Assembly: GCA_038496445.1 (NCBI GenBank)
Contig: JALMLS010000397.1
Location: 248,001-312,000 of the forward strand
Direction of reading: 5' to 3'
DNA length: 64,000 nt
From: Trichosphaerium sp. ATCC 40318
Lineage: Eukaryota; Protista; Tubulinea
Shown: in pieces, positions 6,876-53,469 of the stretch
Layout of the letters: each line of letters starts with the position of its first letter
How positions within the stretch are numbered: position 1 is the first letter of the stretch
Position numbers and translations under genes: made by a program
The notes under the pieces: generated by a model
What the model saw: only the letters and a program-made list of their open reading frames with translations
Databases searched by the model: none
Told to the model about the DNA's origin: nothing

Positions 6876-7395
6876 TGACCACTGTATTGGAACTTATGGA
6901 AACGTTCAATTTTGAGTTAAATTTCATTGAATTTAGCCACAACGACACGTCATTTGTTGTCAAAGTTCTACGCTATAAATGTAATCAATGCTCTTGCAAC
7001 ACATCGTTGAGCCACGTGACTTATAAAGTTTATGACGAAGTTGACAAGCTTTACTAATGCTTTGTTGTAATTACACGAATTTATCCGTGGCAGTGCAACC
7101 CATAATTGTAAAATTACTGGGTCATTTGAAGCTACTGTATAGGCATCTGGATAGCGTCAAAAGACATACTCCGAGAAGCTGCAATTTCGTACAGGAACTT
7201 GTACTTGATTGTGACATTGTACCTAATGATGCTGACTTGCAAGCACGTTCTGCAGCCGTTGGAGTATTCAAGCACATCGTAAAATGTAAAGAGGGCAAAA
7301 ACAGAACGAAATTCAAGCTCCGTAGGCCTTGCCAAAGGAACTAAGATGCGGTCAATACTGTTCTTTTCTGTTGCTAATTGTGAACTTCTACTGCA

Positions 7396-10300
7396 ATGGC
7401 GGCCGCTCGAGCCTTGAAGTTAGTGGTAGTGGGCGATGATGTTGAAAAAATAAAAACAAAACTACTTATTTCGTACACAACTGCCAAGTTTCCGTTTGAA
7501 TACGTACCAACGGTATTTGACAACTACAGCGGTGCGTATTTGATGTGTTTTCGGGTCTTTCTTGTTGTTTATTGAGTAACGGCGTAGCAAATATCAAATT
7601 TGAGGGTGAAACAATATGCCTGGGGCTATGGGATACAGTACGGAGCTATTCGTAAAAAAACGCCTGACCACTTTCTTTTTAAGCAAGGACAAGAAGGATA
7701 CGATAGACTTAGACCACTCACCTATCCAGTACATTCTAAAAGTACTTTTGTTTCGCTAATTAATTTTTATTTCAGCAAACGGACGTTTTTATTCTGATCT
7801 TTTCTATTGGCTCTCCTTCTAGCTTTCACAATATTTTAAGCAAGGTACGTTTTTATCTGCTGCTCAAAACTTGAGACCAACTACCAAAAACCAACATGTG
7901 CTCTCATCACAATTTACTACATTAAACACGTGCGAAAGCAATTACTCCTACAACCTTAGTTCTTCTAACTTGAAGTAGTGGCATCCGGAAGTTACTCACC
8001 ACGCGCCTGGTATTCCATATTTGCTTGTTGGTGGTCAACTAGAATTTAGAGATGACCCTGATAAGATTGAAGAGTTAAAAGCTAAGGGACAAGCGCCAAT
8101 AACTTATGACCAAGGTGGGTTTGTTTTTTCAACTATTCATATTAAACTTTTGATAAGGTCTTCAAATGGCGAATGATATTGGCGCCTTTAATTACATGGA
8201 GTGTTCAGCAAGATCTAGAATTAATTTAAATGAGGTATTCGAGGCTTGTGTAGGAAAAGTAGTGCATGCAGCGAGCGATGGTAAGTTTTTCGAACATTAG
8301 TTTAAAACAACATTCCCACAGTTTCTTGACGTACTGATCTCAAGATATTCATGCCTTCACAATAGCAGGGCTCTTTCAATATTTTCAAATTAAAATAACA
8401 CCTTTTGTTAGGTAATAAAAAAAAGAAGCGGAAAAAACTGAAAGGAACTGAAGTTAATTATATTGAAAACTTTTCTACAATTGCACCAACCATACCTTTC
8501 CAACGTGGTAAATTTCCAGCTGTAAAAATACTCATACTAGGACATGGTGGATCAGGTACACCCAATAGAGAAATGCTTCATTAGTTTATTGTTCTATTAG
8601 GTAAAACGACATTGCTTGACAAAATCGCAGTGCGGAAATCCAAGGGTGTAACACAATCGACCATATCACTTAACACGCGGGCTTTGAAACTAGTAAATAA
8701 TGTATCAAGTATTGCTTATGACTTTGGAGGGCAAATGGAGTATCTTACAAGCCACAAGTTCTTCTTTTCTGACAAGCACTCAATTTATATAATAATGGTA
8801 CGATTCTCCCTTTATTTAAATTCCTATGATTATTCCCGTCCTTGCGAGGCTTGACTTTAGAACGCTCCCTTATGGCTTGTAATTACTTACACACTTTGAT
8901 ATTAGGTTGATGTTTCCACAGACTTAGAGACTCAAAAGGAGCATGTACTTCATTGGCTTCAGGTTCTTGATACCAACGGTTTGTTGCGCCACGAAAAAAC
9001 AAGAAGTATAATTGTTGTGGGAAACAAACTCGACCTTGTCGAGGATCCAGACACTGCTATAAATGGCATAGTGGAAAATATTCAGAAACAGATTGACGAG
9101 GCTTTACAACTTCCAACAGCAGCTTCAATTACGTTTGGCAAGGATATGATTATGTCAGCACTGTCCAGTACGTCTTATTTACAACTTTCGTGTTTTTTCC
9201 TTTTGCTTGAAAAATCACAAGTGATGTCTGAAACTAGTGTTAAAGAATACTTCTTTCACATTCGATACATACCATCGCAAGAGCGGCTGTTATGTTTGTA
9301 GATCTCATTACTAATTTAGCTCAATTTTAGATACCTGCGTTGATAGATTCAAAGCTGCCTTGTCTACAAGTATTAAGTCTATCAAATCAACTTATCCTGA
9401 GCAACCACTTCTATGGCGTGCTATAGATTATCTACTGACTGAGTCTAAATTATTCTCTAAGAAGTCACAGACATTGTTTACAATGTACGTTTCAAAAAAA
9501 AACAAAAAAAAAACTGTCCATCTGAGAAATGCTCAAGCTGTTCTTTTTACTTTCTACATCTTGCTTTTTCATACATCTGATTTACTGGTTGGCTTAGAGA
9601 CGCTCTTCAACAATTCTTGGCTAAGAAATGTACAGACTCTGAGAGTCTATTGATAGACTCTGGCTTGAAAAGAGAGTATATAGGACACTACAAACGAGAG
9701 TTTCTTTGTAAAGATGGTGACGATAAACCTCAGCCCGAAAAGTCTAAAGCGCAGCTAGCATATGCAATTTCACATCTACATCGTGTAGGAAAAGTCATGT
9801 ATGATAGTGTACGAATGAGCTATAACACCTTTTCTCAAATAATCTTTTCTGTTTAAATAGAAAACAAAATCAGTTTGTTTGAATCCCAACACAATTGCTC
9901 GTGTCATTGCAAGTTTCATTGGTCCAGAGCAGCATATAGCACGATTGAACGGAAATATCAAGAGCTTGAAGACTTATCGAACGGCAATTATAAGTGATTC
10001 TGTGGCCATTGATAAAATCAAGGCTATTCCGGAGCTCAGTAAAATTACTGATCAGGAATGTGTGACTTTACTGTCTTTTATGGAACAAATCAATGTATGT
10101 TGCAAGTTGAATGAAGCAGAAGCCGTACGTTGACAAGAGTTATTGAGAAAATACAAAAAAGAAAGAACTAATGAGAAAAAAAAAAGGAACAATATGGTCA
10201 GCAAGGTTACTTGTTTTATAGCTTAAGACCAGAATCTGATATGATGTATATGCCACCACCTACAAACGACGATCATAATGAGACATTTATCAGTGACACT

Positions 10301-13129
10301 AGAGATGACAATGTCATTATGAAAGTACAACACACGACAAAAGGTGCAATTGAGATTTTTTTGCAAAATTACTTACAGCTACTAGGCGTAAAAGATATGC
10401 TTGGAGAGGAGATTTATGAAGAAGGTGCAATAATGATACGTTGAAAGTACTTATGTTTAATAGAGGGCAAAGAAACGTTAACATATCATTGCCTATCAGA
10501 GAAAGAGGGTATTAAACAAGTAATTGTTCCGTTTGCTGATCGTGATGATATTATTTTCCACAAAACCGTCAGAGTGCTTGCATTCAGTCTAAGTACACGC
10601 AAAGGAGCTATTACTTCTGATACGTTTAATGAACTTCAGGGGAGGCTTAGAAGTACGTGATTGTGGTCAACAATGAGCCAGGGTTCTTTTATTAACGTTT
10701 TGAATAGGATTCAAAGATGGTAGATATAAGTTGTTTATGAACTCTATGGTTCTTAAAGATCCTGATGGTAATGTAATATGCTTGTACTATAAGAATGGAA
10801 CGATAACTGTCGTTGTTCGTGGACTTGCTCCAAAGATGTGGAAGGTAAATACACGCTGACCTTGTATCTTTGTCTCACGTGTTTTAATTGTTGTAGAGTA
10901 ACCTTACAGCAGAACTCAACAAATTTGGCCTTAAGAGTTATCCTATATGTCCTTGTAGTGCTCAAATGGGTCAAGTAGTGAAATTAACTCAAGATGAAAT
11001 CAACAACGGTAGAAAGTGTACCTTTACCGGCCTCCAAATTAGCCGTGAAGAAATAGTTAATGGATTTCCTTGGCAGCGTAGCATTTCTGGCAATCCACTT
11101 TGGAGCACTGTCAGGTACAGCCACCCCTTGCTGAATAGCGTGTCTAATAAGTTCAAGATCTTCTATGATGGAAAAACGAACAGGGGAGCATGAGCACCTA
11201 TGGAAAAGGCAGGGAAACCTTCAATACACTGAGCTAACTATGAACGAAACATTTCAAGTACGAGCTCTTTTTTTTTTGTTTAGCAAGTTTCTCAGTTAAT
11301 GTACTTAGGACCGTAAAGAAGAATATCTTAGGATTCGTGATATGTTTTATACTTTTGTTGGAAAAGACAACACATCCTTGTTTGAGATGGAAAAGGCCAC
11401 AGTATTCCACAGCCCAGCAGTAGAAGAGAGGTTTAGCGGATTTTATTCTAAACTAGTACAACGAATGTTGAGGTCAGATAGCTCTCTTGCACGTGCACCA
11501 TCTGTCGTTACCAGTGAGTAAACTCAAGCATAATATACACAATAATGTTAACAGTATTCCTTAGAAGTACATCAAGATAAAGCACAGACGGAAAAGCAAC
11601 AGTGGCAGCAATGGTGATAGCCAATTTTTTTTCTCTATTAATTGTGTACTTAGGGTTTTGTCTCATTTGGAGAAATACTCTATGCGTGTATCAGGAAATG
11701 AACATATTAATCTGATCGCAGGATTCCATGGTACTTCTGAGGTACTAGATTCAACTTACAGAACGGAGTTTGTGTAACATTTCGGGTTAGGAAGTCAGCT
11801 TTAAAATCGCTGAAAACAATTTCTTGGAACCAGCGGATAAAGAACGGATGGGTATCAAGGTAACAGACCCTGGATACTTTGGTAATGGCATATACTTCAC
11901 TCAGTACCCTACATATGGTAATAAACATGAGAGACTCTTCTTTGCCCTAACAACAAGTTTAGGTTCGTTGTATGCTGAGACAAGAGAAACAGATAGCTTG
12001 CAGTGTATGGTTATTTCTTGGATTATGATGGGCACGTGTTATTTTAATGTACTATTTACTAATGTTTGTACCTTATTAGGTAAGCCTTATCCTGTCACAG
12101 AAGCACCTAATCCAAAAGATCCAAACACACTTCTTGGGAAGGGATTAGTTGTACGCTGGGTTTTTGTACTCTCGTTCTCAAGAAACTCATTTATCTCTAA
12201 GGATGGATATGACTCTCACTATGTTGTTGTAAAAAGTATGGATTCACGAGGTTTTGTACAGTGGCCTTGTCAACCTCATGAAGATCCGAATGCAGATGAG
12301 ATTGTCGTTTTCTCTAAAGACCAGGTACAGTAACACTGAAATTGCTCACTTAATAAAACCCTTCTAGATTCTCCCTCGATACCTTGTTTACTACAAGCGT
12401 GTTAATACAAATGTTGGTGAGAGTAACTCTGGATTGGTATTTACTCAAATGAAAGAGAAGAATTTAGAATGGCGTGATGCGGATAAGCTTGTTCTTTGGG
12501 TAGACAGTAACTTATCAGAGCAGAACAAAGTTTTGAAAAAGTCTATTGAATTGGCTAAAGGAAACATCAAAGTACTTGTCGTTGTCTTTGGTGTATTTGT
12601 GATGAGTGATGGTTAATGGGTTTGTTTAGGTTATTATTATGACTTCTTCTGTTGAGCTAAAAACTTGGCTTGAGAACGCTGCTAAGCATTTGAAAGGAAG
12701 AAACTTTATCATCATAACAAATAGATATAGAAAAACAGATGGTGGAGAAAAAGCAGCTAATAACCTTATTAAGTACGTTTGTTTAACATACATAGAGTTC
12801 ATTACATACTTATTTTATATCTTGCTGCCTATCATAGAGCAAAAGATCAACACTTTTATTTTTTTTTTTGCCTGTTTTGGCCTACAAACACAAACCTTGT
12901 ACCTCGTGGCCTGGTTCAGTGAAATTCAGCGCCTTGATTATATTTTTTAACGGTTTTTGTTAGGATGGTGCACAGTCAAAAAGAATGGAAATCTATTCCT
13001 ATTATTGTGTTTTGTGGTAATACAAAAGCAGCCAAAAATCTTGAAAAATCAAAATGTACAAAAGTTACAGATAAAGCAACTGATGTTTTATCATGGTGTA
13101 CCACTCTAAAAAAGAAACCATTTAAATAA
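7396..13129 (+). CDS. Multidomain Roco protein: degenerate Rac/Rho domain + Roc + COR + PARP-like ADP-ribosyltransferase + receiver-like C-terminal domain
   Basis: Hand-spliced frame: [22 protein letters not shown]|[15 protein letters not shown] (Rho); ILGHGGSG|[27 protein letters not shown] (Roc); [20 protein letters not shown] (COR-like); [37 protein letters not shown] (ART); [25 protein letters not shown] (receiver-like). Confidence 0.85.
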
Positions 13130-13373
13130 ATAATTTTGGAGAAAAAGAACAAGTATTATACACGTACTACTCAATTAACGTTTTAGACACTATGAAAGTG
13201 AAAAACATACGATACGAATATAACATATGATTGGCTTTTTTTACTGTAGATGTACTATACGGTTGTAGTACTTTAAGGAGTAAAAAATCTTCAATACTAT
13301 ATCCAAAGGAAGCAACACAAGAACAGACGATCTTATGAATTTGAAGAACTACTAGCTTAATGACATGTAAATA

Positions 13374-14779
13374 TTAATTATGTTCTATTGTACGCCTTTT
13401 AGATAGTCCATTTCTTATTATGGTATCAAAACAATCAGCAACTAGAGAAAAGGAATCAGCGATGACAAGAGAGAAACAAATTCACAAAAAATGGACTCTT
13501 TGCTTTGTCCACAATGTATGACATTATTACACTAACCTCCTTGTCCAGTAATAGCTGATACCTCAAAATATTTGCATTTATGAAGCAACGCACATTGTTT
13601 TGCTTCTTTGTCAAGAACCTGAGTAAAGATTTTCAGTTCAGATTTTTTTCTTGGTTTTCAAAACAAAAAAGAGTTGTCGTCTTATTGTTACAGACTGTGA
13701 ATCAGCTAAACATGTATTTTAACAACGTACTTTCCTACTACCACGCTTATCGGACTTGTTGCCAACAAGATAGATAGGTCTTTTTGTAGCCATACCAAGA
13801 AGTAGTTTTACATATTCAAAGCTCTCAGTGGAAGTTATGTCAAACACAAACATTGTTCCTATACTTAATAGATCTAAATCATCATTCTAAAAAAATAGGA
13901 CTATCAGTCTAAATTCTTACTTCGTTAAAAAGACTACGTGTGAATATTCAAGTAAAGAAACTTGAACAACTTTTTTGTTAAGTTCCATCTCGAGGTTTAT
14001 TGTCTTAACGAACATTAAGTGAACGCTGAGTAGCCTTGAAAATTTACCTTTCTGAATGCTCTACCTTCTTTATAGTTTAGTACAATCTTATCCTCTACAA
14101 AGTAGTGACACAAGCTAGTTTTGCCTATGAAAAACCGATTAATAACTGCAAATGAAACGTATATTTTTGTTATTCTTTCGGCTGCTCTTTTCACTCCTCT
14201 TGAGTTTTTACAATGACGCATGGCATTGAAATTTTAATGATAAAATTCTTGCTTACCACAACCATCTAATCCAACTATATGTATGCGCACTGACACTTCA
14301 TGTAATTCTCTACAGAACGGTAAAAATACAGTTGTGTTCTTATTTTTTTTTGTTTTTTAGCCTGGTAACAATTCCGTACATATTGAATATCCGTTTATAC
14401 CATTTATCATACTCTTTCCATAAAACAAAAACACCTGGAGATATCTCAAAAGTGCGATACAAAGACTGCCCTTCAAATCCATGATCAGACTTAAAAGAGA
14501 GCTCTCCACCTTCCATTTTTATTTGCTTCATTTTATCACGTGGTATTCCATAAATAACGTTCTAAGCAATTATTTTAGAATCTCCATAGCCTATACATTA
14601 ACTGGTCGTACCTCAGTAATGATGTCATAGAATGTTATTTGCTTTGGAGTTACCTTGACACGCATTGTAACGTAATCTCGCTTAAAATAGTCGACAACCA
14701 TTGAAACTACGTTTCTATAAGATACAAACAAATTCCAACGCACCCAGAGTTGTATTAGGCTGTTCTGTAGTAAATCCAT
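13374..14779 (-). CDS. Divergent Ras-superfamily small GTPase with a ~130-aa N-terminal extension
   Basis: IVGLDGCG|KTSL P-loop, MFVFDITSTESF, IYLVGNKSD (G4), YFEVSAITG (G5); no DxxG and no CAAX seen. Confidence 0.7.
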
Positions 14780-37374: not shown

Positions 37375-38601
37375 TTACATATACACTGTTGTACCTTTTA
37401 AAGCGTTTGCACCTTCTTTTGTTACTAAAGTATGAAAGGCGTAAAGATATGTTGCCCCCAGTTCTTTAATGCCTTCATCAGTTACTGAAGTTTTACTGAG
37501 GTCAATAGTATGAACTCCGGCAAGTGCTTTAACACCTTCATCAGTTACTGAGGTGTAACTGAGGTGAATAGTATGAACTCCAGCAAGTGCTTTAATACCT
37601 TCATCTGTAACTGGAGTGTTATTGAGGATAATAGTATGAACTCCGGCAAGTGCTTTAATACCTTCATCTGTTATATTCTTGCATTCAGACAGGTCTATCT
37701 CATAAACACCATTTAGTGCTGTAATGCCTTCATCAGTTACTGAAGTTTTATTAAGGATAATGGTATGAACTCCAGCAAGTGCCTTAATACCTTCATCTGT
37801 CACATTCTTGCAATGATAAAGATGTATCTCATGTACGCCCTTGAGTGCTTTTATGCCTTCATCAGTTACTGAAGTGCTACTGAGGTGAATAGTATGAACT
37901 CCAGCAAGTGCTTTGACACCTTTATCTGTTATGTTCTTACATAAATAAAGGCTTATGTCATGAACGCCTTTGAGTGATTTAATGCCTTCATCAGTTACTG
38001 AAGTTCTATCAAGGGAAATAGTATGAATTCCGGCAAGCGCTTTAACACCTTCATCAGTTACTGAGGTGTAATTGAGGATAACGGTATGAACTCCAGCAAG
38101 TGCTTTAACGCCTTCATCAGTAACTGAAGTGAAACTGAGGCGAATAGCATGAACTCCAGCAAGTGCTATGACACCTTTATCTGTTATGTTCTTACATGAA
38201 TAAAGACTTATGTCATGAACGCCTTTAAGTGCTTTAATGCCTTCATCAGTTACTGAAGTTCTATCAAGGGAAATAGTATGAACTCCGGCAAGTGCTTTGA
38301 CACCTTCGTCTGATACTGATGTGTCTAAAAGATAAAGCGTGTGAACACCAGCAAACTGTTTCATGATGCTGTTTTCAAAACCTAGTCCTCTAAGGGTGAT
38401 TTTTGTGTTTTTCAGAGTACCAGCGTGTTTTAATGCTGATTTTGCTTGAGTTAGCGTTCTAATCGTAATAGCATGGTATCCAATAATATCATGAATAATA
38501 GAAGCAAAGAAACGACAGGTTTGACAAGCTGCAAATCGCGATTTGGTTGTTTTACGCAAGATGTACGCTACTATTTCTGTGGGAAGGCGCAATAAATTCA
38601 T
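37375..38601 (-). CDS. Intronless F-box/LRR protein (21-22-aa repeats)
   Basis: F-box LLRLPTEIVAYILR...CQTCRFF; ~15 repeats of VTDEGIKALAGVHTIxLxx; single 408-aa ORF. Confidence 0.9.
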   Translation of the reverse strand: MNLLRLPTEIVAYILRKTTKSRFAACQTCRFFASIIHDIIGYHAITIRTLTQAKSALKHAGTLKNTKITLRGLGFENSIMKQFAGVHTLYLLDTSVSDEGVKALAGVHTISLDRTSVTDEGIKALKGVHDISLYSCKNITDKGVIALAGVHAIRLSFTSVTDEGVKALAGVHTVILNYTSVTDEGVKALAGIHTISLDRTSVTDEGIKSLKGVHDISLYLCKNITDKGVKALAGVHTIHLSSTSVTDEGIKALKGVHEIHLYHCKNVTDEGIKALAGVHTIILNKTSVTDEGITALNGVYEIDLSECKNITDEGIKALAGVHTIILNNTPVTDEGIKALAGVHTIHLSYTSVTDEGVKALAGVHTIDLSKTSVTDEGIKELGATYLYAFHTLVTKEGANALKGTTVYM

Positions 38602-49268: not shown

Positions 49269-50756
49269 ATGAACCAAGACACTCCATATTTTGATGCTGT
49301 TCCTGTTGAGATAATCGTACTTATACTGATGTACGTTGACAAAACAATACACTCAGTAGTACGAACATCGAAGCTTTTAGCCCAAATAGTTAAACTTTAC
49401 AACATTGGCTATCAACACAGAAGAGTAATAAGAATATATTCGAAGAAAACACTCAAGAAAGCGTTTAAAACAGTACCTCAACTATTTACAACATGTGAGA
49501 TTTCTATAGAATATAATATAAAGCAAAAAGAAATGAAGAAATACCTTCACAAAGTAAAGTATTTATCATTTTTTGGATATTTCTGTCAAACGACATATTG
49601 TACTTTGGATTTTTCTGTCTTAAAGAACATTCATAGTTTTGATAATAGGTATTGTTCCATTGTCCTTCAAGCTCATAATATTGATCAATTATCTGGGGTA
49701 CATACCATAAGACTACGTTGTGGTACAGTATCACGAAGATGTATGAAATTATTAGCAGGCGCTCACACCGTTGACTTACTTGGAAACTTGAGCGTCAGCA
49801 GTAAAGAGGTCAAGGAACTAAAAGGGGTTCACAAGATCAACCTTGCTGAAACAAATGTTACTGATGAAGGAATAAAGGCGTTGGCTGGAGTTCATACAAT
49901 TGATATTTCTTCAACAACGGTTACTGATGAAGGAGTGAAGGCATTGGCTGGTGTTCATTCAATTATCCTGTCGCGTACAAAAGTTACTGATGAAGGAGTG
50001 AAAGCGTTGGCTGGAGTTCATTCAATTATTCTGTCGCGCACAAAAGTTACTGATGAAGGAGTAAAAGCATTAGCTGGAGTTCACACTATAGTATTACAAG
50101 AGTGTTTTGAAGTTACAAATGTGGGTATTGCATCTTTGGCTGGAGTACATACAATCGATCTTACGTATACCAAGGTGAACGACACAGGATTAAAAGCATT
50201 GGCTGGAGTTCACACAATTTGTTTATCTCATACGCAGGTTTCAGATGAGGGTGTAAAAGCGTTAGTTGGAGTGAAGTGTATAAGTTTAGAGGCATGTGAA
50301 AAAATAACAAACGACAGTGTAAAAATGTTGAAAGGAGTACACACCATTAACCTCACTAGAACAAACGTTGGTGATAAAGGAGTGAAAGCATTGGCAGGTG
50401 TTCATACAATTAACTTGACTAGAACTAGAATAACGGATGCCTCACTGAAAGCTTTAGCTGGTGTTTATAATATCACACTGAACCATTGCTACGCTATCAC
50501 AAATGCTGGTATTAAAGCACTTGCAGGAGTACACACAATTCATCTAGTTACAACTGCTGTAACAGATAAAGCACTGAAATCTCTGGGTGGTGTGCACACT
50601 ATAAACCTTACCTGTACATCTGTCACTGATAAAGGTATTAAGCAGTTAGGACGTGTCAATACTATTTATCTCAACCAAACTTGTGTTACACCTAAAGGTA
50701 TCAAATCAATGGCAAGTTCATTTAAGCATTTAGTGTACACGCCAGACAGGCGCTAA
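49269..50756 (+). CDS. Intronless F-box/LRR protein, paralog of 37375-38601
   Basis: F-box FDAVPVEIIVLILMY...VRTSKLL; ~16 LAGVHTIxLxxTxVTDxGVKA repeats; single 495-aa ORF. Confidence 0.9.
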   Translation: MNQDTPYFDAVPVEIIVLILMYVDKTIHSVVRTSKLLAQIVKLYNIGYQHRRVIRIYSKKTLKKAFKTVPQLFTTCEISIEYNIKQKEMKKYLHKVKYLSFFGYFCQTTYCTLDFSVLKNIHSFDNRYCSIVLQAHNIDQLSGVHTIRLRCGTVSRRCMKLLAGAHTVDLLGNLSVSSKEVKELKGVHKINLAETNVTDEGIKALAGVHTIDISSTTVTDEGVKALAGVHSIILSRTKVTDEGVKALAGVHSIILSRTKVTDEGVKALAGVHTIVLQECFEVTNVGIASLAGVHTIDLTYTKVNDTGLKALAGVHTICLSHTQVSDEGVKALVGVKCISLEACEKITNDSVKMLKGVHTINLTRTNVGDKGVKALAGVHTINLTRTRITDASLKALAGVYNITLNHCYAITNAGIKALAGVHTIHLVTTAVTDKALKSLGGVHTINLTCTSVTDKGIKQLGRVNTIYLNQTCVTPKGIKSMASSFKHLVYTPDRR

Positions 50757-50856: not shown

Positions 50857-51729
50857 TTATTTTTTGTCTATTTCTACACCTGCTACATAAGTCCGCTTAT
50901 CCATTAATACACCTTGATCCGTCCACCAAAAACATTCTCCTTTCAATTGGTCTTTGACATAATTTGATAGCTGCGTTAATATACCTTCACTGTTCCAAAC
51001 TTTACACTCTCCTTCTCGTTTACCATTTGAATAATGACCTTCTACTGTTTTGTTACCTTTAACATCCCACTGAGTGAACTTTCCTTCTTGCTCATTGCTT
51101 ACATAATAAAACACTTCTTTCAATTCCCCCGTACGGTGCCACTCCTCATACTTTCCTTCAGCCTTACCATTAACATGACTAAGTTGGCACTTAAGTTGAC
51201 CATTGTTGTACCAATACCTACAAACTCCGTGTTGTACTCCATTGACATAGTACCGTTGTTGCTTTATTTTACGATTGGTATGATACCATATGCTCTCTCC
51301 ATGTTTCTTATCATTGACATAATGAAGAAGCTCATAACACAACTTTCCAGTACGGACATATTTTTTGTTTTTTCCTTCCAACTTATTTCTGTAATAGTTA
51401 CGCTCTTCAAGTACTACATAGTATTTCCCGAACCAATTTGAACTTTCTAGTATTTTTAGCCATTTCCCTTGTTTGTTTAGATCAACATCAAATCTAGAAC
51501 TACCAATAGCGGCCTCTTTTGATAGTAGAGGCCATTTTATATATATTTCTGGGTCTAGGTCGGTTATATCAAGTTGGAGCTCTCCAGGAAGGCTAAATAG
51601 ATGGCAGACGCCTGTTTCTGAAGTATTGTTCTACAAAGTTCTATTATTAACAGTGTGCTACACTTAACGCGTCGTTGATACCTTGGTCGCCTTCTTTATA
51701 TGTAACGCATGTAAAAGTTTGCCCAACAT
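50857..51729 (-). CDS. F-box-like + MORN-variant (MORN_2/YwqK-like) repeat protein, two exons
   Basis: The frame stays open upstream of the called ORF to an acceptor at 51631; the 51-nt intron 51631-51681 joins MLGKLLHALHIKKATK|NNTSETGVCHLFSLPGELQLDITDLDPEIYIKWPLLSKE; repeats YVNGVQHGVCRYWYNNGQL. Confidence 0.75.
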
Positions 51730-52755: not shown

Positions 52756-53469
52756 ATGGCTGCAGTAAAGCACAGTGATAAATTTATAATTTCTCTTGCT
52801 GGTTCATTTAATCCAATACATATTGGACATGTAGAGGCACTATGTAAAGCTAAGAAGGCAATTGAAGACGTTTTTGGTATTGGGAGCGTAATTCAAGGCT
52901 ATTTAGCCGCAGCACCTGATAATTATGTATCTGGTAAACTAGAAGATGAGGCTATGCATTCAAAACATAGATTAGCGCTTATAGATATAATGACGCAAAG
53001 ATTCGAATGGATTAAACCATGTGCGAAAACATATTTTAATGCAAAATCTTGCCTTGAATCAAATCGAAAGAACATACATGGACATCATGGGAACAACCTT
53101 AAAATGGTTGTAGTTACCGGAGGCGATAGGTCTAATCTATCTAAAGCGAAGAAACAACGTGATATGTATCACGTGATGATTGCAAGGAAGGGAGATACAC
53201 AAAGAATACAGGAAGAATTTAGTCAGTTTGAGTCATCTCTTGGTGGACGTACAATGAGTAAGAAAGAGAAGAATAGAATTATATTTGTACAAGAAGAAGT
53301 ATCAGATGTTTCATCAACAAAGATAAGAAAGATATTAGCAACTGTGCTTTTGATTCAAAATGAAGAAAAAAAGAAGAAAAAGTTGGGTGATTTGATTGCC
53401 AAAGGATGGCTCACTAGTGAGGCTGTAGATTATATCATACATAACGAGAAAAGTTTGTACATGAAATAA
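52756..53469 (+). CDS. Intronless HIGH-motif nucleotidyltransferase (NMNAT/NadD-like cytidylyltransferase family)
   Basis: GSFNPIHIGH, HRLAL, VTGGD, DVSSTKIR. Confidence 0.85.
   Translation: MAAVKHSDKFIISLAGSFNPIHIGHVEALCKAKKAIEDVFGIGSVIQGYLAAAPDNYVSGKLEDEAMHSKHRLALIDIMTQRFEWIKPCAKTYFNAKSCLESNRKNIHGHHGNNLKMVVVTGGDRSNLSKAKKQRDMYHVMIARKGDTQRIQEEFSQFESSLGGRTMSKKEKNRIIFVQEEVSDVSSTKIRKILATVLLIQNEEKKKKKLGDLIAKGWLTSEAVDYIIHNEKSLYMK

What the first reader, a model, noticed from the sequence alone, without database searches (positions are those of the whole stretch)
7396..13129. Rac-Roc-COR-ART-receiver fusion: candidate new Roco class with an ADP-ribosyltransferase output
One hand-spliced frame (roughly 1300 aa by estimate) carries two GTPase folds in tandem, a COR-like region, a PARP/ARTD catalytic domain with a complete triad (GFHGT, GIYF, DEIVVF) and a receiver-like Rossmannoid tail. 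The Roco proteins I know (LRRK2, DAPK1, Dictyostelium Rocos) use LRR sensors and mostly kinase outputs. Here a Rho domain sits at the sensor position and an ART replaces the kinase. Inference: a sensor-switch-executioner protein for cell-autonomous defence or death signalling.
Basis: partly seen in the sequence, partly recalled or inferred. Interest (0 to 1): 0.92.

Follow-up and report, generated by a model that had tools for sequence, protein, structure and literature searches.

The report
Roco GTPase with ADP-ribosyltransferase output
An expressed 28-exon gene, probably from an amoeba, encodes a 1,286-residue protein that joins a nucleotide-dead Rac-like domain and a Roc-COR GTPase switch to a PARP-type ADP-ribosyltransferase and a receiver-like domain without a phospho-acceptor; it belongs to a Roco subfamily, not described in the papers I could search, that carries an ADP-ribosyltransferase where other Rocos carry a kinase.

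Summary
7396-13129 (+) splices into one open frame. RNA contigs corrected the hand-splice to 28 exons and 1,286 aa. One 2,873-nt RNA contig joins the second half of Roc, COR, the ART and the tail.

Domain order:
- Rac-like pseudo-GTPase: 60-67% identical to Rac1/2 in two exons. P-loop and NKxD are destroyed; the switch regions and Rho insert are intact.
- Polybasic linker.
- Roc with intact G1/G3/G4 motifs.
- COR.
- PARP-fold ART with H982-Y1021-E1108.
- CheY-fold tail (Z 13) with Asn at the phospho-acceptor position.

No kinase domain is present.

It is not unique. A small family of Roc-COR-ART-REC proteins exists as unnamed predictions in Mastigamoeba, Trichosphaerium and metagenomic eukaryotes. 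Their N-terminal modules are LRR, ankyrin or pseudo-Rho. The scan's own unverified notes list at least nine similar genes elsewhere in this genome. I found no paper describing the architecture.

Most likely mechanism (inferred): a GTP-switched ADP-ribosyltransferase with an N-terminal input module. A role in defence or cell death, and the Rac domain acting as a decoy, remain untested. The scan has found this before on other DNA of the same genome.

Verdict: real, a new variant of the Roco kind, interest about 0.68.

The parts
7396..13129 (+). Whole coding region, 28 exons, 1,286 codons plus TAA
   Evidence: Exons 7396-7531, 7588-7637, 7684-7728, 7776-7844, 7979-8114, 8158-8280, 8412-8555, 8601-8797, 8906-9167, 9331-9484, 9598-9808, 9861-10124, 10202-10343, 10386-10424, 10464-10652, 10708-10844, 10897-11114, 11158-11257, 11309-11513, 11565-11613, 11654-11741, 11791-11917, 11963-12031, 12080-12150, 12202-12324, 12368-12571, 12630-12772, 12964-13129. 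Introns are 39-191 nt. All are GT-AG except one GC-AG.
7396..8279 (+). Rac-like pseudo-GTPase domain (aa 1-186, exons 1-6)
   Evidence: Exons 1 and 5 hit Rac1/Rac2/Cdc42 best, at E about 1e-11 for 45 aa each, including the Rho insert. Pfam Ras E 3e-4 on exon 1 alone.
7429..7458 (+). Destroyed P-loop ([10 protein letters not shown] where Rac has VGDGAVGKT; one residue inserted, both glycines lost)
   Evidence: Residue alignment to Rac1 and Cdc42. The exon is covered by RNA contigs with no differences.
8027..8047 (+). Destroyed G4 motif (VGGQLEF where Rac has VGTKLDL)
   Evidence: Alignment to Rac2. RNA contig X4 record 10 covers 7979-8111.
8280..8443 (+). Polybasic linker [11 protein letters not shown] (aa 187-197), spanning the 131-nt intron 8281-8411
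   Evidence: Translation of model 2. It lies where Rac carries its polybasic tail; no CAAX box follows.
8519..9353 (+). Roc GTPase domain (aa 223-395) with G1 GHGGSGKT, G3 DFGGQ and G4 GNKLD
   Evidence: Pfam Roc E 1e-4 on exon 8 alone. The family profile A2, built without window sequence, matches aa 223-420 at 5e-36. The same profile hits M. barkeri Roco2 and LRRK2 Roc at 1e-19.
9354..10938 (+). COR region (aa 396-780)
   Evidence: Profile A2 positions 255-387 match aa 494-615 at 1.5e-27. A2 aligns to LRRK2 1333-1609, which is Roc plus COR-A. Pfam COR-A scores 32.5 bits in P0037 and COR-B 16 bits in P0023, both below cut-off.
10939..11034 (+). Remnant of a family-conserved Cys/His motif (CPxC...C..GH in relatives; here CPC...C..GL)
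   Evidence: Compared by eye with P0008, P0034, P0065, P0066 and P0037. The exon is covered by RNA.
11345..12439 (+). PARP-type ADP-ribosyltransferase domain (aa 885-1140): H982 at 11727-11729, Y1021 at 11893-11895, Y1032 at 11971-11973, E1108 at 12298-12300
   Evidence: Family profile A1 matches aa 947-1281 at 1e-121. A1 hits PARP4 at 1.8e-8, also PARP2 and PARP12, with H, Y and E aligned. The AF2 model of relative P0001 (51% identical) matches PARP1/2/4 ART domains by Foldseek at probability 1.00. Y and E are invariant in 36 family sequences.
12479..13114 (+). Receiver-like (CheY-fold) pseudo-receiver domain (aa 1154-1282): D1162/S1163 after strand 1, N1215 (12720-12722) at the phospho-acceptor position, C1249, T1267/D1268
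   Evidence: AF2 model of the P0001 tail has pLDDT 93 and pTM 0.88. All top Foldseek hits are receiver domains. VIA-align gives Z 13.3 and rmsd 2.0-2.1 A over about 110 residues. No Pfam Response_reg hit. The residue register was inferred from the predicted strands.

Best explanation
One expressed gene encodes a kinase-less Roco protein with this domain order: nucleotide-dead Rac-like domain, polybasic linker, Roc GTPase, COR, PARP-type ADP-ribosyltransferase (H-Y-E), receiver-fold domain without a phospho-acceptor.

Shown here: the transcript, the domain order, the motif states, and membership in a conserved Roc-COR-ART-REC family whose other members carry LRR or ankyrin repeats in front of Roc.

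Inferred from what is established for Roco proteins (LRRK2, Dictyostelium Roco4, C. tepidum Roco): Roc binds and hydrolyses GTP, COR mediates dimerisation, and the nucleotide state sets the conformation that releases or restrains the C-terminal enzyme. Here that enzyme would transfer ADP-ribose from NAD+ to protein targets, or consume NAD+.

The Rac-like domain cannot cycle nucleotides but keeps the Rac switch surfaces. It most likely acts as the input or protein-binding module. The pseudo-receiver most likely acts as a regulatory or dimerisation module for the ART.
For: Single transcript. Rac-like domain and its broken G1/G4 motifs. Roc-COR. ART fold and aligned H-Y-E. Receiver fold. No kinase hit in the window exons or in any relative scanned. 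Family with the same domain order: P0008, P0034 (Mastigamoeba balamuthi), P0066, P0023 and P0037, plus loci L002-L013, L017-L021 and L026. LRR or ankyrin repeats upstream of Roc in L006, L013, L021, L002 and L003. This matches the general Roco layout of repeats, then Roc-COR, then an enzyme.
Against: No biochemical evidence exists. ART activity, GTP binding and coupling between them are all inferred. Window exons scanned singly fall below Pfam cut-offs (Roc 22.9 of 27 bits, PARP 13.9 of 26.7, Ras 20.8 of 21.6), so domain calls rest on family profiles and a 51%-identical proxy model. COR-B is only weakly supported. Exons 2-4 have no RNA cover, and the 8280|8412 junction is inferred from depth bins, not listed. 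All RNA contigs stop at 13106-13113, before the stop codon. The Cys/His motif conserved in relatives is degenerate here.
Confidence: 0.55

Rival explanations
1. This reading is a special case of the main one: an NLR-like innate immune receptor with an integrated decoy. The Rac mimic is bait for bacterial or viral factors that bind or modify Rho-family switch regions. Modification or binding of the bait releases the Roc-COR switch, and the ART then depletes NAD+ or ADP-ribosylates targets to stop the intruder or kill the cell.
For: The nucleotide pocket is destroyed, yet switch I, switch II, the Rho insert and the polybasic tract stay 60-67% identical to Rac. The equivalent domain in relatives has decayed to a weak RhoA match (E 5e-4 and 0.08). 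N-terminal modules vary across the family (LRR, Ank, pseudo-Rho). Several paralogues occur in one metagenome sample and, according to unverified scan notes, in this genome. ROCOs have been proposed as immune receptors in brown algae (PMC11378527), and Roc-COR occurs with TIR and Death domains in molluscs (PMC9334734).
Against: There are no infection, expression or cell-death data. The pseudo-Rho domain is shared by distant family members (P0008 and L003; P0034 aligns from its C-terminal part), unlike a recently integrated decoy. No test of diversifying selection was possible. Dictyostelium Rocos act in chemotaxis, cytokinesis and development, not immunity.
Confidence: 0.15
2. A housekeeping signalling enzyme of the Rac/cytoskeleton pathway. 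The nucleotide-free Rac mimic tethers the protein to Rac GEFs, effectors or membranes. It could also serve as a pseudo-substrate for the ART, which modifies Rho-pathway or cytoskeletal proteins under Roc control.
For: Nucleotide-free Rho mutants bind GEFs tightly (established knowledge). The polybasic tract resembles Rac's membrane and nuclear targeting signal. Dictyostelium Roco proteins carry RhoGEF/RhoGAP domains and regulate chemotaxis and cytokinesis (PMC11378527 introduction, PMC6337361). The gene is steadily expressed in ordinary RNA runs.
Against: No partner or substrate is known. LRR- and Ank-bearing relatives lack an obvious Rac link. No CAAX box is present for lipidation.
Confidence: 0.17
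3. A scaffold with an inactive ART. The PARP-like domain binds NAD+ or ADP-ribose, or only proteins, and the protein signals by assembly rather than catalysis.
For: Some family members have lost the His (R in the 13-member P0048 cluster, T in P0002, W in P0037). The tail and the Rac-like domain are both pseudo-enzymes. Human PARP13 is an inactive PARP (established knowledge).
Against: This copy keeps H, Y, Y and E. Tyr and Glu are invariant in all 36 family sequences compared, which argues for selection on catalysis.
Confidence: 0.1
4. Two neighbouring genes (a Rac-like gene and a Roc-COR-ART gene) wrongly joined, or a pseudogene.
For: The 8280|8412 joint is not in the printed joint table. Exons 2-4 have no RNA cover. 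Contigs break at exon ends 7531 and 7979.
Against: Depth bins fit a contig spanning exons 5-6-7 and do not fit an unspliced one. The frame stays open over 28 exons. P0008 and L003 carry the same Rho-like domain fused in the same ORF as Roc. There is no stop codon or CAAX box after the Rac-like part.
Confidence: 0.03

Closest known systems
Roco family (LRRK2/LRRK1, Dictyostelium Roco4 and GbpC, C. tepidum and M. barkeri Roco)
   Same: Roc G domain followed directly by COR. A catalytic output domain lies C-terminal of COR. Relatives have LRR or ankyrin repeats N-terminal of Roc. The best PDB sequence matches are M. barkeri Roco2 and LRRK2 Roc-COR-A.
   Different: No kinase: the output is a PARP-type ART plus a pseudo-receiver. 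This copy has a Rac-like pseudo-GTPase instead of LRRs, and no WD40. Roc G3 has Gln (DFGGQ), unlike the Arg I recall at that position in LRRK2.
PARP/ARTD catalytic domains (PARP4, PARP2, PARP1, PARP12)
   Same: ART fold, with the H-Y-E triad and the second NAD-stacking Tyr aligned.
   Different: No WGR, BRCT, zinc-finger, macro, WWE or vault-related domains. About 16-22% identity to PARP structures. An insert of about 30 residues precedes the His strand. The domain is fused to a GTPase switch. Only 55 representatives were found among 1.84 billion proteins.
Rac/Cdc42 and atypical or pseudo Rho domains (RhoBTB/RacA, p190RhoGAP pseudo-GTPase domains)
   Same: Rho fold with insert helix, Rac-like switch I and II, a polybasic tract, and an N-terminal position in a multidomain protein, as in RhoBTB.
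   Different: The P-loop has a one-residue insertion and lacks both glycines. TKxD is replaced by GQLE. There is no CAAX box. The domain is fused to Roc-COR.
Response-regulator receiver domains and pseudo-receivers (CheY, RR468, PorX REC, FrzS)
   Same: (beta-alpha)5 CheY fold at Z 12-13 and rmsd about 2 A. An acidic residue follows strand 1.
   Different: Asn is at the phospho-acceptor position, Cys replaces Thr/Ser after strand 4, and there is no Lys after strand 5. Pfam Response_reg does not detect it. It sits C-terminal of an ART.
NLR / STAND receptors with integrated decoys, and AP-GTPase conflict systems (PMC7159879, PMC8195603)
   Same: A three-part logic of variable N-terminal module, NTP switch and enzymatic effector. 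The family is multi-copy.
   Different: The switch is Roc-COR, not NB-ARC or NACHT. No death-fold or TIR domain is present. The immune role is untested.

Membership tests
Roco | Roc G domain with intact G1, G3 and G4 | tested here: met
   GHGGSGKT, DFGGQ and GNKLD are read directly. Pfam Roc 22.9 bits on exon 8 alone. Profile A2 matches at 5e-36. A2 against LRRK2 and MbRoco2 gives 1e-19.
Roco | COR domain directly after Roc | tested here: met
   A2 aligns through LRRK2 COR-A (1333-1609), and the window matches A2 positions 255-387 at 1.5e-27. Pfam COR-A and COR-B hits in relatives are below cut-off, so the COR-B part is only weakly supported.
Roco (LRRK-type) | Protein kinase domain after COR | tested here: not met
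   No kinase family hit in window exons or in any relative. A PARP domain occupies that position.
PARP/ARTD | ART fold of the PARP type | tested here: met
   AF2 model of P0001 (51% identical to aa 959-1275) against PARP1/2/4, Foldseek probability 1.00. Pfam PARP is above cut-off in P0008, P0066, P0065, P0017 and P0001. The window exon alone scores 13.9 bits.
PARP/ARTD | H-Y-E catalytic triad | tested here: met
   H982, Y1021 and E1108 align with the PARP4 triad through profile A1.
PARP/ARTD | NAD+-dependent ADP-ribosyl transfer | not testable with these tools
   Needs an enzyme assay.
Rho-family GTPase | Rho insert and Rho-type switch regions | tested here: met
   Alignments to Rac1/Rac2/Cdc42, E about 1e-11 per 45-aa exon.
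Rho-family GTPase | P-loop GxxxxGK[ST] and [NT]KxD guanine-specificity motif | tested here: not met
   The motifs read GDDVEKIKT and GQLE, so this is a pseudo-GTPase.
Rho-family GTPase | C-terminal CAAX prenylation box | tested here: not met
   The domain continues into the linker and Roc.
Response-regulator receiver | CheY-like (beta-alpha)5 fold | tested here: met
   (Z 13.3).
Response-regulator receiver | Phospho-acceptor Asp after strand 3, with Thr/Ser and Lys partners | tested here: not met
   The family motif is RI(I/V)(T/S)N, N1215 here. Cys follows strand 4 and Thr/Asp follows strand 5. The register was inferred from predicted strands, not from a residue-level structural alignment.
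NLR-like immune receptor with integrated decoy | Variable sensor modules among paralogues, response to pathogens, effector-triggered death | tested here: inconclusive
   N-terminal modules do vary among relatives (LRR, Ank, pseudo-Rho). Nothing bears on pathogens or cell death.

The most novel reading that the evidence does not exclude
Amoebae carry a family of Roco-based innate immune receptors whose effector is a PARP-type ADP-ribosyltransferase. In this member, a nucleotide-dead but surface-faithful Rac mimic is an integrated decoy. It would detect pathogen factors that target Rho GTPases and trigger GTP-switched NAD+ consumption or ADP-ribosylation.
Probability: 0.13. Interest if true: 0.9.

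Novelty: new variant of a known kind. Interest (0 to 1): 0.68.

Why it matters
Roco proteins are studied mostly because of LRRK2, and how Roc-COR controls an attached enzyme is still debated. A natural family with the same switch attached to a different enzyme gives an independent system for studying that coupling. It would also be a PARP-type enzyme placed under a G-domain switch; neither of the two PARP surveys I checked mentions a GTPase fusion (PMC2964712, PMC4245714). The variable N-terminal modules (LRR, ankyrin, pseudo-Rho, and MORN according to scan notes) and the multi-copy state make the family a candidate receptor system in amoebae. The well-preserved but nucleotide-dead Rac surface is a concrete, testable bait hypothesis.

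Tried and rejected
- Exon-by-exon Pfam scans gave only sub-threshold hits. A spliced protein has no reference, so the whole protein could not be given to the Pfam, structure or database tools. I used family profiles and relatives instead.
- The first hand-splice was wrong at five places and was replaced.
- The in-frame read-through piece 11791-12324 gave no Pfam hit.
- The search for homologous proteins with P0008 and P0001 returned only 3 hits each.
- The window's own full-length protein was not recovered from the collections, although a neighbouring ORF of the window is present.
- A scan of prokaryotic genomes with A1 failed for lack of a conserved stretch, so prokaryotic presence is untested.
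- The sequence search of the tail against PDB gave only repeat artefacts (alphaRep). Only fold comparison identified it.
- Atlas feature searches gave leads only.
- The organism was not identified. 'Probably amoebozoan' rests only on the closest named relatives, Trichosphaerium and Mastigamoeba.
- Rejected: a second paralogue in this window (none); a kinase output; a working tandem of two GTPases.


Full report
**Gene model.** The window is AT-rich eukaryotic DNA (GC about 0.37) with dense short introns. From ATG 7396, a GT-AG chain can be spliced into one open frame ending at TAA 13127-13129.

RNA-derived contigs from four public runs, at 99% identity or more, were laid on 7300-13250.
- They confirm junctions 8555|8601, 8797|8906 (a 12-nt loose end matching 8906 onward), 9167|9331, 9808|9861, 10424|10464, 10652|10708, 10844|10897, 11114|11158, 11257|11309, 11741|11791, 12150|12202, 12324|12368, 12571|12630 and 12772|12964.
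- They reveal four introns I had missed (10344-10385, 11514-11564, 11614-11653, 11918-11962) and a GC-AG intron at 12032-12079.

The corrected model has 28 exons and 1,286 codons. Its spliced length from 8993 to 13129 is 2,874 nt, against the 2,873-nt contig X1 record 2. That single contig therefore runs from mid-Roc through COR, the ART and the tail.

**The link from the Rac-like part to Roc (8280|8412).** This joint is not in the printed table, but X4 record 10 implies it. The record is 302 nt at depth 6.4, and its positions 170-302 lie on 7979-8111.
- Spliced exons 5-6-7 predict bin depths of 4.57 and 1.38.
- An unspliced course predicts 5.02 and 0.93.
- The observed values are 4.53 and 1.41.

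Exons 2-4 have no RNA cover. The tool drops human-like contigs silently, and this stretch encodes the nearly Rac-identical switch II, so the gap says little. These exons are perfectly colinear with Rac.

**N-terminal domain.** Exons 1 and 5 (45 aa each) hit Rac1, Rac2 and Cdc42 at about 1e-11, with roughly 67% and 60% identity by my count. The matches include the Rho insert.
- The P-loop reads GDDVEKIKT where Rac has GDGAVGKT: one residue is inserted and both glycines are lost.
- The TKLD motif reads GQLE.
- Switch I (YVPTVFDNY), switch II ([17 protein letters not shown]) and a polybasic tract (NKKKKRKK) are kept.
- There is no CAAX box.

This is a Rac-derived pseudo-GTPase. That it cannot bind nucleotide is an inference from the motifs.

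**Roc-COR.** The G1 (GHGGSGKT), G3 (DFGGQ) and G4 (GNKLD) motifs are intact. A profile built only from relatives (A2) matches aa 223-420 at 5e-36 and aa 494-615 at 1.5e-27. In the PDB, the same profile hits M. barkeri Roco2 and LRRK2 residues 1333-1609 (Roc plus COR-A) at about 1e-19, ahead of the Rab proteins. Pfam COR-A and COR-B hits in relatives are sub-threshold.

**ART.** A search of 1.84 billion representatives with the ART exons returned only 55 proteins. Many carry Pfam PARP above the cut-off.
- Profile A1 matches the window protein at aa 947-1281 with E 1e-121.
- A1 hits PARP4 (1.8e-8), PARP2 and PARP12, with His, Tyr and Glu aligned.
- An AF2 model of the closest relative, P0001 (Trichosphaerium, 51% identical over aa 959-1275; pLDDT 82), matches PARP1, PARP2 and PARP4 ART domains.
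- Y1021 and E1108 are invariant in 36 family sequences. H982 is His in 20 of them, Arg in 12 (sequences of the P0048 cluster), and Thr or Trp once each.

**Tail.** The family-conserved tail has the pattern LWVD...S..E...WL...RIITNR.R..DG...A...P...C. Modelled alone it gives pLDDT 93 and pTM 0.88. It is a CheY-type receiver fold:
- every top Foldseek hit is a receiver domain;
- VIA-align gives Z up to 13.3 and rmsd about 2 A over about 110 residues.

By strand register, the phospho-acceptor position is Asn (N1215). The Thr/Ser position is Cys, and no Lys follows strand 5. Pfam does not see Response_reg. It is therefore a pseudo-receiver.

**The family.** Full-length or near full-length relatives have the same order and no kinase: P0008 (1,131 aa), P0034 (Mastigamoeba balamuthi, 1,065 aa, aligned to aa 133-1284), P0066, P0023 and P0037 (with PDZ inserts).

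A metagenome scan gave 23 loci. Most show Roc-COR, then ART, then the receiver-like domain, on one strand, and several distinct loci come from one sample.

The modules upstream of Roc vary:
- LRRs in L006, L013 and L021;
- ankyrin repeats in L002 and L003;
- a decayed Rho-like domain before Roc in P0008's contig and in L003, matching RhoA 77-165 at E 5e-4 and about 0.08;
- in L021, LRRs that abut Roc directly.

The pseudo-Rho is therefore a subfamily feature. This copy is far more Rac-like than the others.

The scan's own notes, which are unverified, list at least nine further genes of this kind on other pieces of this genome, some with MORN repeats.

**Literature.** Searches for Roco or Roc-COR together with PARP or ART found no description of this architecture. 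Neither of two surveys of PARP evolution mentions a GTPase fusion. ROCOs as candidate immune receptors, and Roc-COR with TIR or Death domains, have been described. Absence from the searchable library does not prove novelty.

**Mechanism.** The anatomy is shown. The inferred working is a Roco-style GTP switch governing an ADP-ribosyltransferase. The N-terminal module would be the input, and the pseudo-receiver would be a regulatory or dimerising module.

Three questions cannot be decided here: whether the system serves defence, whether the Rac mimic is a decoy, and whether it instead ties into Rac signalling. I rate the decoy/immune reading at about 0.13-0.15.

**Verdict.** The finding is real and expressed. 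It is a new variant of the Roco kind and a member of a small uncharacterised family rather than a one-off.

Noticed in passing
window 13106-13129: All three long RNA contigs end at 13106, 13112 and 13113, at an A-run, 14-21 nt before the predicted stop codon, and no run covers anything beyond. The true 3' end and stop are unresolved. The cause could be an assembly break at the homopolymer or very early polyadenylation.
   Followed up: partly
window 11791-12330: Three ART-region introns (45, 48 and 51 nt) are in frame and free of stop codons, so the raw ORF reads straight through them. One of them, 12032-12079, is a GC-AG intron. Nine of the 27 introns have lengths divisible by three.
   Followed up: yes
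window 7057-7430: An RNA contig (X3 record 7) runs unspliced from about 7115 to 7430. A 95-codon ORF (7057-7344) lies upstream, in the same frame as the start codon but closed by a stop. It is either a long 5' UTR with an upstream ORF or the overlapping 3' end of the upstream gene. X3 also lacks one base at 7334.
   Followed up: no
window 13400-14300 (-): A Ras-family small GTPase gene lies tail-to-tail with this gene. The exon at 13719-13853 scores Pfam Ras E 6e-5.
   Followed up: partly
window 7498-7529: In run X4, another transcript shares these 32 nt of exon 1 (the switch I coding region) and then diverges on both sides. It is presumably a genuine Rac paralogue of the same organism.
   Followed up: no
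window 10939-11034: The motif CPxC...C..GH, conserved between COR and the ART in relatives (possibly a zinc ribbon), is degenerate here: CPC, and Leu where the relatives have His.
   Followed up: partly
window 37375-38601 (-), 49269-50756 (+), 50857-51381 (-), 52756-53469 (+): Other genes in the window: an intronless F-box/LRR_6 ORF and a second intronless LRR_6 ORF without an F-box hit, a MORN-repeat ORF, and a cytidylyltransferase-like ORF. The last is stored in the protein collection as the window's own protein. No second Roc-COR-ART gene is in the window.
   Followed up: partly
L026:821-3649; L012/L013: One metagenomic relative has two receiver-like domains in tandem after the ART. Others have an insert of about 160 residues between the ART and the receiver-like domain.
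   Followed up: no
Atlas clusters: By shape, the receiver-like tail resembles a 146-aa rotifer protein cluster (TM 0.74) and regions of rotifer proteins carrying the arginine-ART family PF01129. This could mean a wider association between ARTs and a receiver-like domain. It is a lead only.
   Followed up: no
window 9434: Run X2 (a different organism label) reads G where the window has A. X2 contigs are 95-99% identical in part, which suggests a related strain or species carrying the same gene.
   Followed up: no
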